This document shows, piece after piece, positions 56,327-58,103 of a DNA stretch of 64,000 bases; the first letter of the stretch is position 1; every line of letters begins with the position of its first letter. Where the stretch lies: the NCBI GenBank assembly GCA_904063045.1, contig CAJFCJ010000016.1, forward strand, positions 62,001 through 126,000. The letters run 5' to 3'. The notes under the pieces were generated by a model that saw nothing but the letters and a program-made list of their open reading frames with translations, made no database searches and was not told the origin of the DNA. A program made the position numbers and the translations under genes. This stretch comes from Dimorphilus gyrociliatus. Lineage: Eukaryota > Animalia > Annelida.

Positions 56327-56751
56327 CCTTTAGATTATTAATTAACTCGTTTTGTCATTAAATAAACAGGATCTTTGTAGAAGCTGAACGCGTCTTCAAA
56401 GAATACCAGTTCTTATTCACAAAGAATGTGACTATTTCGCAAAATTAGTACCGGTAAATTTTAGTAATATGGTTACAGGTTCCGGCACAAGATTTTTTTG
56501 GATAGTTTTCAACAAGTGATTTTAGATTAAAAATTAGTTTTTCTTTCCAAAGTAGAATAACAAGAAGACAATTATTTTCAATTAAAAGAACGTTATAACA
56601 TAGCTTTTAACACATGAAACTATTTTCTGAAATGACTCTAATTTCTATTTACATTAAAATCTGTTGAAAATACTATTTTCATTGTTTAATGTCAGGTATA
56701 TAATAATCATAAGTTAAGTTTTAGTCATAAACTATAAAAGTTTATTCATTA

Positions 56752-57333
56752 TTATTTTAGATAAAATAAAAAGTCGCTCTTTTTATCAATCATAATTTCG
56801 ACAAGTGAAATCAGATAGGGAGAATTTCTTATTTGATTCTTCTCTATATCCGACTTTTTTTTGCTTGCGAGCTTCAAAGAGATAAGCTCTTGGTATGCAT
56901 TAACAAGACGCATCCAGGATACGCAGTTGTCAAACATTCCTGGCAACAACTACTGGAAAAAAGCATACATAAGAAGTCCAGTGATGAAAATTGTTCCAAC
57001 AACGCCAAACAATTGAACGAGAATAATTGAGAAATCTCCAGAAATTTCACCAACTATAAAAGGATGGCAAAACGCATAGTATAATGCTGTACAAAGGATA
57101 GATATCACAATAAGTTCAGTGATAACATCAGCGTTGGTTGGTCCAAACTTCCTGCCTAGTTGTCGCCAAGTAGGTCTAAGAGGAAAAAAACATATAATAG
57201 CCATCTAATAACAATCGAAGTTTTTTTTACCAAAGGCTTATCATAAGATTATTATACTATTAGAATGTGTTCGATAATTTAAAATAGTGAAAAATTCATG
57301 CACTTACCTTTCAACTGCGTATCCGAGTCATTG
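56752..57333 (-). other. In-frame downstream extension of NAA20 (candidate readthrough/recoded region) with an intron at 57176-57307
   Basis: After the NAA20 UGA: CAA UGA CUC GGA UAC GCA GUU GAA AG|GTAAGT...TTTTTTTCCTCTTAG|A CCU ACU UGG. The frame stays open 75 codons (two TM helices) to UAG 56950-56952, then 65 more codons to UAA 56752-56754; AATAAA at 56746-56741. Confidence 0.55.
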
Positions 57334-57349
57334 TCATTCAAGCTCCTCT
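56878..57349 (-). other. Long rod-like RNA secondary structure in the NAA20 mRNA
   Basis: Nested inverted repeats read from the sequence, including a perfect 13-bp pair (57312-57324 with 56917-56929) and a 13-bp pair with 2 GU (57157-57169 with 56940-56952), plus about six more helices in colinear order. Confidence 0.8.
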
Positions 57350-58103
57350 GGTCTAATTGGATCTTTAGGAGCTATTAGAGATTTCTTCTCTTTGTCGGCT
57401 GGCAGCGCCTTTCTCATATCAAATGCATCTTCTTCAGCCTCAGTCGGTGTTCCTGAATAGTAACTGAGAACTCGTCGATATACAATATAGCCGAAATTTT
57501 CGTACATTTTTATGGCAACTTTATTCGAAACTCGCACAAAAAGGTCAACAAAATGGCAATCTTGCCTTTAGAAAAAGAATGTTATAAATAGAAAATGTTG
57601 TTAAAATACGAAAAATAGACTTACTTTTCAGAATATTCTTCTAATGACTGCATAAGCTTTCTTGCTATTCCAAGTCGCCTATATTCTGGTGCTACTGTGA
57701 GAGCAGTAACATGACCATGCCAGTTATCCCCAGTTCCCTCAACTTTTCCTAAGACTATAGTAAATACAAATTAAATTTAACTCTTTATATTTTTATACTC
57801 GTATTAACTCACTGTATCCCTGAATTCTACCATCAGGCCCTTCAGCTACCAAACATAGCTCTGGCCATTTGGTTAAATACATCATGTAGAAAAAATTTCC
57901 ATACTATTAAAACGAAAAAATAGAGATTTATTGTTTGAACTCTATAAAACTATTTAATATAACTTACAGTTTCGGTATAAGGATCAAGGTTTCTGTGGGT
58001 AGTTGAGCGATATTAAAATATATTTTTAAAGTTACTTTTGTTGAACTTACATATTATTAAATTGAAAAAGGTCACTAGACGTGAAAGGCCTAATATTTGT
58101 CAT
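57334..58103 (-). CDS. NAA20: N-alpha-acetyltransferase 20, NatB catalytic subunit (176 aa)
   Basis: MTNIRPFTSSDLFQFNNINLDPYTETY, WHGHVTALTVAPEYRRLGIA, FVDLFVRVSNKVAIKMY, EDAFDMRKAL, ends PIRPEELE*; five coding exons. Confidence 0.97.

What the first reader, a model, noticed from the sequence alone, without database searches (positions are those of the whole stretch)
56878..57349. Splice-dependent rod-like RNA duplex (about 80 bp, 8 helices) built on the NAA20 stop region
On the minus-strand transcript I can pair, in strictly nested order: 57349-57340 with 56878-56889 (10 bp); UGACAAUGAC 57336-57327 with GUCUUGUUA 56909-56901 (9 bp, 1 bulge, contains BOTH NAA20 UGA codons); GGAUACGCAGUUG 57324-57312 with CAACUGCGUAUCC 56929-56917 (13 perfect bp); then, only after removing intron 57176-57307, UUGGCGACAACUA 57169-57157 with UAGUUGUUGCCAG 56952-56940 (13 bp, contains the downstream UAG); GGAAGUUU 57152-57145 with GGACUUCU 56979-56972; CCAACCAACGC 57141-57131 with GCGUUGUUGG 57005-56996; UGAAC with GUUCA; and AUUGUGAUAUCU 57111-57100 with 57026-57037 (10/12). 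The right arm is continuous while the left arm is interrupted by the intron, so the structure is encoded at the spliced-mRNA level. Several G-U pairs fit the minus strand, and the region is markedly more GC-rich than neighbouring UTRs. I know of no described element like this in NAA20/NatB mRNAs. Function is inference: a readthrough stimulator, an ADAR substrate, or a dsRNA-binding-protein/hairpin-siRNA platform.
Basis: partly seen in the sequence, partly recalled or inferred. Interest (0 to 1): 0.92.

Follow-up and report, generated by a model that had tools for sequence, protein, structure and literature searches.

The report
Conserved long-range stem at NAA20 stop
In this small worm genome, the NAA20 mRNA carries a conserved 13-bp RNA stem starting 9 nt after a leaky double UGA stop, closing over a conserved in-frame two-helix membrane peptide, which is the known layout of stems that make ribosomes read through stop codons.

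Summary

**What holds up**
- The intron 57307-57176 is spliced exactly as proposed, in this species and in two related lineages.
- All eight listed pairings exist (78/80 pairs).
- The spliced region folds better than shuffles (z = -4.8).

**What does not**
That is about 40 bp, not 80.
- They form equally well in unspliced RNA.

**Comparative evidence**
- In a relative about 11-15% diverged, the two partners of the 13-bp stem lie in perfectly invariant blocks (34 nt and 58 nt).
- The 74 codons between them evolve as protein in the NAA20 frame only (BLOSUM permutation 0/5000; other frames P = 0.34 and 0.38).
- UGA-CAA-UGA-C is invariant.

**Reading**
- A 13-bp stem, a 9-nt spacer after UGA1 and a 250-nt loop match the extended 3' stem-loop readthrough stimulators of alphaviruses and Drosophila kelch (Firth 2011).
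- Most likely this is a readthrough stimulator producing a rare membrane-anchored NAA20 isoform, a new member of a known kind. No translation data were available to test this.
- The scan had already noted the double-stop readthrough on this same stretch (s1-080410).

The parts
57337..57564 (-). Last coding exon part of NAA20 (76 codons, ending ...PIRPEELE at the position where NAA20 normally ends).
   Evidence: The transcript contig X3 gives the exon structure. The 176-aa CDS was rebuilt from the exons. The best protein hits are NatB catalytic subunits at up to 69% identity. Organism A differs by 14 synonymous and 2 non-synonymous codons.
57328..57336 (-). Double stop UGA-CAA-UGA. UGA1 is 57336-57334 and UGA2 is 57330-57328. 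Each is followed by C. CAAUGA after UGA1 fits CARNBA, and CUCG after UGA2 is close to CUAG.
   Evidence: Sequence. Invariant in organism A and in lineage D-G. The motifs are as cited in PMC4132726.
57325..57333 (-). 9-nt spacer (CAAUGACUC) between UGA1 and the 5' arm of the stem. Only 3 nt separate UGA2 from the stem.
   Evidence: Known stimulators have spacers of 7-9 nt (PMC3159437).
57312..57324 (-). 5' arm of the 13-bp perfect stem (h3), GGAUACGCAGUUG.
   Evidence: I7. Pair probability 1.00 in spliced and unspliced RNA. Invariant in relatives.
56917..56929 (-). 3' arm of h3, CAACUGCGUAUCC. It lies 250 nt downstream in the spliced mRNA (382 nt in the gene), in the true 3' UTR just after the extension's UAG.
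57309..57342 (-). Left invariant block (34 nt, 0 differences in the relative). It holds the last two NAA20 codons, both stops, the spacer and the 5' arm.
   Evidence: P(0 differences in 34 nt) = 0.004-0.013 at the local divergence.
56883..56940 (-). Right invariant block (58 nt, 0 differences). It holds the 3' arm of h3, the 3' half of the junction helix and a local 9-bp hairpin. Conservation collapses immediately 3' of 56883.
   Evidence: four runs are identical here, with 5 substitutions and 2 indels in the next ~25 nt, followed by an unalignable segment. P(0 in 58) = 8e-5 to 6e-4.
57176..57307 (-). 132-nt GT..AG intron inside the loop of the structure, 27 nt after UGA1. It is phase 2 in the NAA20 frame (AG|A).
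   Evidence: The joint 57308/57175 is in X3, and the same joint is in X2, X10 and X13. The other four introns of the gene are 58-64 nt.
56953..57175 (-). Main part of the in-frame extension ORF (74 full codons in the terminal exon). Together with 57327-57308 it gives an 81-codon extension after UGA2, with two hydrophobic helices.
   Evidence: Translation. Coding signature in this frame only. Hydropathy is kept in the relative. AlphaFold gives two long helices, pLDDT 70. No homologue was found.
56950..56952 (-). UAG that ends the extension. It is paired within h4.
   Evidence: Unchanged in the relative.
57157..57170 (-). 5' arm of h4 (13 bp in the window, 11 bp in the relative).
   Evidence: Pair probability 0.95.
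56939..56952 (-). 3' arm of h4.
   Evidence: The A-to-C change at 56941 in the relative shortens the helix by its two end pairs.
56932..56935 (-). 3' strand of a 4-bp helix whose 5' strand (57309, 57308 | 57175, 57174) spans the exon junction. This is the only truly splice-dependent element.
   Evidence: p = 0.99 in both species. The G-to-A change at 57308 in the relatives turns a G-U pair into A-U.
57130..57141 (-). 5' arm of h6 (4-5 bp plus 6 bp).
   Evidence: (p = 0.95). Two one-sided pair-preserving changes: 57135 A-U to G-U, and 57130 G-U to G-C.
56996..57006 (-). 3' arm of h6.
   Evidence: Unchanged in the relative.
56891..56916 (-). Local 9-bp hairpin directly abutting the 3' arm of h3, inside the invariant block.
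   Evidence: p about 0.9 in both species.
56714..56746 (-). AAUAAA (56746-56741) and the mRNA 3' end (about 56714). The spliced 3' UTR measured from UGA1 is 488 nt.
   Evidence: Sequence. End of the X3 contig. UTR length.

Best explanation
The NAA20 mRNA (minus strand) carries an extended 3' stem-loop of the kind that stimulates stop-codon readthrough.

**Shown**
- NAA20 ends at UGA-CAA-UGA-C.
- 9 nt after the first UGA begins a perfect 13-bp stem. Its partner lies 250 nt downstream in the spliced mRNA, just past the UAG of an 81-codon in-frame extension.
- The stem is continued inward by a 4-bp helix across the exon junction, a 13-bp helix (h4) and a 10-11-bp helix (h6).
- The two stem arms lie in blocks that are invariant in a diverged relative.
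- The codons between them evolve as a protein in the NAA20 frame.

**Inferred**
- When a ribosome has UGA1 in its A site, the base of the stem sits at the mRNA entry channel. This slows or alters termination, so a near-cognate tRNA sometimes decodes the UGA. The leaky contexts help (UGA-C at both stops; CAAUGA fits CARNBA).
- A small fraction of ribosomes pass both stops, cross the exon junction and add a two-helix hydrophobic tail. The result would be a rare membrane-anchored form of the NatB catalytic subunit.
For: - **Intron and frame.** The joint 57308/57175 is seen in a 100%-identical transcript contig and in two related lineages. The NAA20 frame continues across it.
- **Stem.** 13 perfect bp make this the only GC-balanced 13-mer inverted repeat within 600 nt in the 64-kb window. 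Pair probability is 1.00 in the full mRNA. The region folds with z = -4.8.
- **Geometry.** The spacer is 9 nt, the stem 13 bp and the loop 250 nt. Firth et al. report VEEV at 8-9 nt, 11-12 bp and 101 nt, and Drosophila kelch at 8 nt, 14 bp and 268 nt (PMC3159437).
- **Two conservation peaks on the arms.** There are 0/34 and 0/58 differences, against 12% in NAA20 coding sequence, 15% in the extension and 25% or unalignable just downstream. The joint probability is 3e-7 to 8e-6. The chance that two such blocks hold a perfect 13-mer complement is 1.5e-5.
- **Coding signature of the extension, in the NAA20 frame only.**
  - 10 synonymous and 14 mostly conservative changes, with no stop and no indel. 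The other frames give 5/19 and 1/23, with 4-5 new stops.
  - BLOSUM score is 283 against 222.8 +/- 16.2 for random placement, 0 of 5000. The other frames give P = 0.34 and 0.38.
  - 74 open codons have P = 0.013 by shuffling.
- **Structure kept in the relative.** Its MFE is -105.6, against -91.9 +/- 5.3 for the same 31 substitutions placed at random (P = 0.005, also when matched for codon position). Three one-sided pair-preserving changes occur in core helices.
- **Precedent.** Both stops and their contexts are invariant in three lineages. Double and triple readthrough, the TGA-C bias and enrichment of structures 3' of readthrough stops are documented in insects (PMC5100048).
Against: - There are no ribosome-profiling, proteomic or reporter data. 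Translation past the stops is inferred from one pairwise comparison, plus a partial third lineage.
- Two stops 6 nt apart look like a fail-safe terminator. The stem is well placed for UGA1 (9 nt) but not for UGA2 (3 nt), so the yield of the long form could be very low.
- The 13-bp stem shows no variation at all, so there is no compensatory change. The blocks are conserved in their loops too, which means something besides pairing is selected there.
- An in-frame ATG in the intron (57204) could in principle give the peptide from an unspliced or internally initiated transcript.
- Two differences in 57153-57175 of the relative could not be read.
Confidence: 0.45

Rival explanations
1. It is a conserved long-range 3' UTR structure with a function other than recoding. 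It could compact the 488-nt UTR so that the poly(A) end comes close to the terminating ribosome, protecting the mRNA from long-UTR decay. It could instead be a binding platform for a double-stranded-RNA-binding protein that controls stability or localisation.
For: The stem and rod are real, stable and conserved. The invariant blocks include loops and a local hairpin, which suggests protein contacts. The 3' UTR is long and holds an intron.
Against: It does not explain why the loop evolves as protein in the NAA20 frame (0/5000). It also does not explain why both stops have leaky UGA-C contexts, or why the stem starts at the canonical 9-nt spacing. No helix exceeds 13 bp.
Confidence: 0.17
2. It is a splicing splint. 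In the pre-mRNA, h3 ends 4 nt before the 5' splice site and h4 starts 5 nt after the 3' splice site. Both pair with one continuous downstream strand. The 132-nt intron would be looped out and its ends brought together, promoting its removal.
For: h3 and h4 form with p = 1.00 and 0.95 in unspliced RNA. The spacing between them is 11 nt on both strands once the intron is removed. The intron is twice as long as the gene's other introns.
Against: The bridging strand is transcribed 220-290 nt after the 3' splice site, so splicing may already be done. This reading does not explain the position relative to the stops, or the conservation of h6 and of the coding extension. It could be an added role rather than a rival.
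Confidence: 0.1
3. The two-helix peptide is a separate small gene, translated from the ATG at 57204 in an intron-retaining or internally started transcript. In that case the stem has nothing to do with the NAA20 stops.
For: An 84-aa ATG ORF at 57204-56950 lies in the same frame. Protein-level selection on the ORF does not by itself say how it is translated.
Against: The only assembled transcripts, in three lineages, are spliced, and the intron has no coverage. The ATG lies in the polypyrimidine tract, 29 nt before the acceptor. This reading does not explain the in-frame junction, the invariant stops or the stem spacing. The ORF has no homologues.
Confidence: 0.1
4. It is an A-to-I editing platform. 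The duplex recruits ADAR, which turns UGA into UGG (and UAG into UGG), recoding the stops at the RNA level instead of by ribosomal readthrough.
For: On paper both UGA codons can pair with 56901-56909, and the UAG is paired in h4. The outcome would be the same extended protein.
Against: The helix over the UGAs has probability 0.01, because a conserved local hairpin wins. No helix exceeds 13 bp. The RNA contigs show no A-to-G difference from the genome, although contigs hide minor variants.
Confidence: 0.06
5. It is a relic of an inverted duplication or a chance palindrome, or a hairpin-siRNA precursor, with no present role in translation.
For: The two arms resemble an inverted duplicate of the spliced sequence, with equal 11-nt spacing.
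Against: The arms are invariant across a divergence that makes the neighbouring UTR unalignable. The arms are not a repeat family in the window. The structure is kept against random substitution placement. The duplex is too interrupted to be a Dicer substrate.
Confidence: 0.03

Closest known systems
Extended 3' stem-loop of the Drosophila kelch readthrough site (Firth et al. 2011, PMC3159437)
   Same: It is a cellular gene with a UGA stop. The spacer is 8 nt (here 9), the stem 14 bp (here 13 bp, perfect) and the loop 268 nt (here 250 nt spliced). The arms appear as two peaks of nucleotide conservation, and the in-frame extension is conserved as protein.
   Different: Here there are two stops 6 nt apart. 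The context is UGA-C (kelch has UGA-A). An intron sits inside the loop. The 3' arm lies beyond the stop of the extension, in the true UTR, so the loop is the whole extension. The loop is itself zipped into a rod by further conserved helices. The animal is an annelid and the gene is different.
Alphavirus (VEEV, Sindbis) UGA-C readthrough stem-loop (PMC3159437)
   Same: UGA followed by C, a spacer of 8-9 nt, a stem of 11-12 bp and a loop of about 100 nt. The stem was shown experimentally to raise readthrough up to 10-fold.
   Different: It is a viral polymerase gene with a single stop, both arms lie inside coding sequence, and there is no intron.
Long-distance readthrough elements of plant viruses (tombusviruses, PMC3234231; barley yellow dwarf virus, as cited in PMC4132726)
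   Same: Readthrough depends on base pairing between a site next to the stop and a distant downstream segment.
   Different: The distances are 700 nt to several kb, the genomes are viral, and the process is linked to replication elements. Those papers were seen here only as an abstract and a citation.
Double and triple readthrough candidates of Anopheles and Drosophila (Jungreis et al. 2016, PMC5100048)
   Same: More than one in-frame stop is passed. There is a TGA-C bias, the first stop is conserved, and conserved RNA structures lie 3' of 9-10% of readthrough stops.
   Different: Those are insects. NAA20 is not reported among readthrough genes in any text I could search. The structures there were sought only within 100 nt of the stop.
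Plant eRF1 autoregulation by readthrough plus a 3' UTR intron and NMD (PMC5397192, title and abstract only)
   Same: A readthrough stop is combined with an intron downstream of it.
   Different: Here the intron is only 27 nt after the stop, and nothing was tested about decay. This is a lead only.

Membership tests
Extended 3' stem-loop readthrough stimulator (alphavirus / kelch type, Firth 2011) | Leaky stop, typically UGA followed by C | tested here: met
   UGA-CAA and UGA-CUC are both UGA-C, and both are invariant in three lineages.
Extended 3' stem-loop readthrough stimulator (alphavirus / kelch type, Firth 2011) | Spacer of about 7-9 nt between the stop and the 5' arm | tested here: met
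   The spacer is 9 nt after UGA1. It is only 3 nt after UGA2, so the feature is met for the first stop only.
Extended 3' stem-loop readthrough stimulator (alphavirus / kelch type, Firth 2011) | Stem of 11-14 bp closing a large loop (about 100-270 nt) | tested here: met
   13 perfect bp, a loop of 250 nt in the spliced mRNA, and pair probability 1.00.
Extended 3' stem-loop readthrough stimulator (alphavirus / kelch type, Firth 2011) | Two peaks of nucleotide-level conservation that coincide with the two arms | tested here: met
   0/34 and 0/58 differences, against 12-15% between and beside the blocks.
Extended 3' stem-loop readthrough stimulator (alphavirus / kelch type, Firth 2011) | In-frame downstream ORF with a protein-coding evolutionary signature and a conserved stop | tested here: met
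   BLOSUM permutation 0/5000 in the NAA20 frame only, with no stop or indel. This rests on one pairwise comparison.
Extended 3' stem-loop readthrough stimulator (alphavirus / kelch type, Firth 2011) | Compensatory changes in the stem | tested here: inconclusive
   The 13-bp stem does not vary. Neighbouring core helices show three one-sided pair-preserving changes and one end-pair loss. The only two-sided change (57111/57026) is in a helix that is not predicted to form.
Extended 3' stem-loop readthrough stimulator (alphavirus / kelch type, Firth 2011) | Disrupting the stem lowers readthrough and restoring it rescues readthrough | not testable with these tools
   This needs reporter assays.
SECIS element (selenocysteine decoding of UGA) | Match to a SECIS covariance model in the 3' UTR | tested here: not met
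   An Rfam scan of 56500-57500 at E up to 10 gave only chance-level matches, none to a SECIS family.
Long dsRNA substrate (hairpin-siRNA precursor or hyper-editing ADAR target) | Near-perfect duplex well over 20 bp | tested here: not met
   The longest uninterrupted helix is 13 bp. The robust helices are separated by internal loops.
Long dsRNA substrate (hairpin-siRNA precursor or hyper-editing ADAR target) | A-to-G differences between RNA and DNA, or small RNAs from both arms | tested here: inconclusive
   The X3 RNA contig has no difference from the genome, but contigs drop minor variants. No small-RNA data were examined.

The most novel reading that the evidence does not exclude
An annelid makes a membrane-anchored form of the NatB catalytic subunit by reading through two UGA stops. 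A conserved long-range stem drives this. Its loop is the entire recoded extension, it contains a spliced intron, and one of its helices exists only across the exon junction. Recoding would then be coupled to completed splicing. This would be the first kelch/alphavirus-type readthrough stem outside insects and viruses, and the first membrane-tethered NatB.
Probability: 0.35. Interest if true: 0.72.

Novelty: new member of a known kind. Interest (0 to 1): 0.62.

Why it matters
Programmed readthrough with an extended 3' stem-loop has been shown in viruses and inferred for a few insect genes.

A conserved example in an annelid would show that the device is widespread in animals. The features are an unrelated housekeeping gene, a double stop and an intron inside the loop.

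It would also be a compact natural test case: a 13-bp stem, a 9-nt spacer and an 81-codon extension.

For N-terminal acetylation, a rare two-helix membrane-anchored NAA20 would point to NatB activity localised at a membrane. That is not known for this enzyme.

It also shows that "UTR structures" found by eye should be checked for hidden coding extensions.

Tried and rejected
- **Homologues of the extension peptide:** none in Pfam, the 5.8-billion-protein word search or the ESM Atlas (best score 0.86, below the useful level). It is an orphan.
- **Fetching relatives' genomic DNA through the NAA20 exon protein:** the best hit was 69% identical, so there were no close relatives to fetch.
- **Exact scan of JGI metagenome contigs with 35 nt of the invariant block:** no match.
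- **Repeat-family or transposon origin:** the arm sequences occur nowhere else in the window beyond chance.
- **Rfam:** only chance-level matches, no SECIS and no credible snoRNA.
- **Alternative splicing to skip the stops:** no in-phase GT donor upstream of the stop except a weak AT|GTAC that would delete 55 residues. Skipping the last coding exon would be out of frame (read from the sequence). Only one joint is seen in the contigs.
- **Frameshifting:** not needed, since the extension is in frame 0.
- **SECIS-like AUGA/GA arrangement around UGA2:** considered by eye and rejected. The tandem G-A pairs would not abut the helix, and no model matches.
- **Third ORF after the UAG (note s1-082321):** the relative has 1- and 2-nt deletions and a replaced segment (63 nt by 65) downstream of 56883, so that part is not conserved as coding.
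- **First shuffle script:** it hung and gave nothing, and was redone.
- **Not done:** both read-laying runs were used, so the two unread differences in 57153-57175 and the relative's intron could not be read.
Full report
**1. What is in the sequence**

On the minus strand the window holds the NAA20 gene. A public transcript contig (run X3, 1083 nt, 100% identical, depth 261) lays out six exons: 58167-58051, 57992-57968, 57903-57813, 57754-57624, 57564-57308 and 57175-56714.

The rebuilt CDS has 176 codons and ends ...PIRPEELE. The last coding exon gives up to 69% identity to NatB catalytic subunits.

The stop region reads UGA (57336-57334), CAA, UGA (57330-57328), CUC.

The joint 57308/57175 skips 132 nt with GT..AG on the minus strand. 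It is also used in organism A (X2) and in a second relative found identically in four runs (X9, X10, X13, X16).

The mRNA ends about 56714, 27 nt after AAUAAA (56746-56741). The spliced 3' UTR measured from UGA1 is 488 nt.

**2. The pairings**

- The repeat finder reports the perfect 13-bp inverted repeat 56917-56929 / 57312-57324 (I7).
- It is the only perfect 13-mer inverted repeat with at least 45% GC within 600 nt in the whole window. The other 68 are AT-rich.
- The arm sequences are not a repeat family.
- The spliced 340-nt region has MFE -106.9 kcal/mol against -79.8 +/- 5.6 for dinucleotide-preserving shuffles, z = -4.8. The unspliced form gives z = -3.8 and the opposite strand z = -3.45.

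**3. How much of the rod is believable**

Pair probabilities in the partition function of the whole 1083-nt mRNA:

| Helix | Mean pair probability |
|---|---|
| h1 | 0.00 |
| h2 | 0.01 |
| h3 | 1.00 |
| h4 | 0.95 |
| h5 | 0.04 |
| h6 | 0.95 |
| h7 | 0.03 |
| h8 | 0.03 |

- h2, the helix said to contain both UGA codons, loses to a local 9-bp hairpin (56916-56891). h7 and h8 lose to a local hairpin at 57124-57103.
- The probabilities are the same in the unspliced RNA 57564-56714. The structure therefore does not need splicing in order to form.
- Splicing does add a 4-bp helix whose 5' strand spans the junction (57309, 57308 | 57175, 57174 with 56935-56932; p = 0.99). It also makes the spacing between h3 and h4 equal, 11 nt on each strand.
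- The robust rod is about 40 bp: 13 + 4 + 13 + 10.

**4. The loop is a coding extension**

The frame of NAA20 continues through UGA-CAA-UGA, across the exon junction (codon AG|A), and stays open for 81 codons to a UAG at 56952-56950.

The peptide has two hydrophobic stretches (Kyte-Doolittle 19-residue means up to 2.4). A single-sequence AlphaFold model gives two long helices at residues 11-41 and 47-73, with mean pLDDT 70.

It has no detectable homologue. A fixed frame of 74 open codons arises in 1.3% of shuffles of this stretch.

**5. Comparative evidence**

The second relative was laid at a threshold of 80 letters in 100 alike.

| Segment | Differences | Rate |
|---|---|---|
| NAA20 last coding exon, 57343-57564 | 27/222 | 12% |
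| Left block, 57309-57342 | 0/34 | 0 |
| Extension ORF, 56953-57152 | 30/200 | 15% |
| Right block, 56883-56940 | 0/58 | 0 |
| 56863-56882 (X10 only) | 5/20 | 25% |

- The 56863-56882 stretch also carries two indels nearby. After it, a 63-nt stretch (56757-56819) is replaced by 65 unrelated letters.
- The left block holds the last two NAA20 codons, both stops, the spacer and the 5' arm of h3. The right block starts just after the UAG and holds the 3' arm of h3.
- At the local divergence, the joint probability of both blocks being unchanged is 3e-7 to 8e-6. The expected number of perfect 13-mer complements between two such blocks by chance is 1.5e-5.
- Organism A is also identical over 57309-57345. 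It differs from the window in the NAA20 exon by 14 synonymous and 2 non-synonymous codons, so these lineages are well separated at silent sites.

**6. Coding test**

I rebuilt the relative's sequence from the difference table.

| Frame | Synonymous codons | Non-synonymous codons | New stops | BLOSUM62 observed vs permuted | P |
|---|---|---|---|---|---|
| NAA20 frame | 10 | 14 (R-K, N-D, L-I, I-V, S-T, L-F, F-Y, V-I, M-L and similar) | 0 | 283 vs 222.8 +/- 16.2 | 0 of 5000 |
| Second frame | 5 | 19 | 5 | not matched to this row | 0.34 or 0.38 |
| Third frame | 1 | 23 | 4 | not matched to this row | 0.34 or 0.38 |

- The codon counts are and the BLOSUM values. The two calls number the non-NAA20 frames differently, so their P values (0.34 and 0.38) are not assigned to a particular row.
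- No indel occurs in the extension. The synonymous fraction in the NAA20 frame has permutation P = 0.019.
- The BLOSUM permutation places the same substitutions at random sites with the same original base.
- The hydrophobic profile is kept.
- The extension is therefore under protein-level selection in the NAA20 frame. This rests on one pairwise comparison.

**7. Structure test**

- Placing the relative's 31 substitutions at random gives MFE -91.9 +/- 5.3. The real relative has -105.6, P = 0.005. The result is the same when codon position is matched.
- In the core helices the changes are one-sided and mostly pair-preserving:
  - 57308 turns G-U into A-U in the junction helix.
  - 57135 turns A-U into G-U in h6.
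  - 57130 turns G-U into G-C in h6.
  - 56941 removes the end pairs of h4, which goes from 13 to 11 bp.
- h1 is broken by two synonymous NAA20 changes.
- The one two-sided compensatory change (57111/57026, A-U to G-C) lies in h8, which is not predicted to form.
- 55 high-probability pairs are shared by the two species.
- Two differences in 57153-57175 could not be read.

**8. Comparison with what is known**

Firth et al. 2011 (PMC3159437) describe "extended" 3' stem-loops that stimulate readthrough.

| Case | Stop context | Spacer | Stem | Loop |
|---|---|---|---|---|
| VEEV | UGA-C | 8-9 nt | 11-12 bp | 101 nt |
| Drosophila kelch | UGA-A | 8 nt | 14 bp | 268 nt |
| Here, from UGA1 | UGA-C | 9 nt | 13 bp | 250 nt (spliced) |

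- In those cases the arms show as two separate peaks of conservation. In VEEV the stem raises readthrough up to 10-fold.
- Here there are likewise two invariant blocks on the arms.
- The six bases after UGA1 (CAAUGA) fit the CARNBA readthrough consensus. UGA2 is followed by CUCG, close to the CUAG motif (motifs as cited in PMC4132726).
- Jungreis et al. 2016 (PMC5100048) document double and triple readthrough. They also report the TGA-C bias and enrichment of conserved structures 3' of readthrough stops in insects.
- I found no paper linking NAA20 or this species to readthrough.

**9. Mechanism proposed**

Shown: the spliced mRNA, the invariant leaky stops, the stem and its geometry, the conservation pattern, and the coding signature.

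Inferred:
- With UGA1 in the A site, the base of h3 stands at the mRNA entrance of the ribosome. The adjoining hairpin 56916-56891 may stack on it.
- Termination is delayed, and a near-cognate tRNA sometimes decodes UGA.
- A fraction of those ribosomes also pass UGA2, helped only by its context. They then translate the two-helix tail to the UAG inside h4.
- The long form should be rare, because two stops must be passed.

Possible added roles are looping out the intron (h3 and h4 flank both splice sites) and compacting the long UTR. Neither was tested.

**10. Limits**

- There are no translation data.
- Relatives were available only as difference tables from assembled contigs, so there is no relative intron sequence and no minor variants.
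- The name of the organism (Dimorphilus gyrociliatus) comes from an earlier unchecked note of this scan and was not verified here.
- The same stretch was noted before in this scan as a double-stop readthrough candidate (s1-080410). My tests support that reading and tie the stem to it.

**11. Verdict**

This is a real, conserved long-range stem, about half the size claimed. It is not a novel class of element.

It is most likely a kelch/alphavirus-type readthrough stimulator acting on the NAA20 double stop. It counts as a new member of a known kind, and is interesting for its gene, its taxon, its double stop and the intron in its loop.

Noticed in passing
window 56950-57204 (minus strand): An ATG inside the intron (57204, in the polypyrimidine tract) opens an 84-aa ORF in the same frame as the extension. 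The peptide could therefore also be made from an unspliced or internally started transcript. No such transcript is assembled in the runs examined.
   Followed up: partly
window 57176-57307: The intron after the stop is 132 nt, about twice the length of the other four introns of the gene (58-64 nt). It lies only 27 nt after UGA1.
   Followed up: no
window 56891-56916 (minus strand): A local 9-bp hairpin (UGGAUGCGU ... AUGCAUACCA, with a 7-nt loop) directly abuts the 3' arm of the 13-bp stem. It lies inside the invariant block. It might stack on the stem or bind a protein.
   Followed up: partly
window 57097-57129 (minus strand): A local hairpin inside the extension ORF is strengthened in the relative by three non-synonymous changes (GUU to AGU and UCU to ACU). 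These create two new pairs, which may reflect joint selection on the peptide and the RNA.
   Followed up: partly
window 56752-56949 (minus strand): After the UAG the same frame stays open for 65 more codons. In the relative, however, the stretch downstream of 56883 has 1- and 2-nt deletions and a replaced segment, so it does not look coding.
   Followed up: partly
window 57443-57710: A coral metatranscriptome run (X1) holds a spliced NAA20 fragment at least 99% identical to the window. The animal, or a very close strain, was therefore present in that coral sample.
   Followed up: no
window 56699-56731 and 57224-57256: A 33-nt, 73%-complementary, AT-rich inverted repeat links the intron to the tail of the 3' UTR. 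It is probably chance in AT-rich sequence.
   Followed up: no
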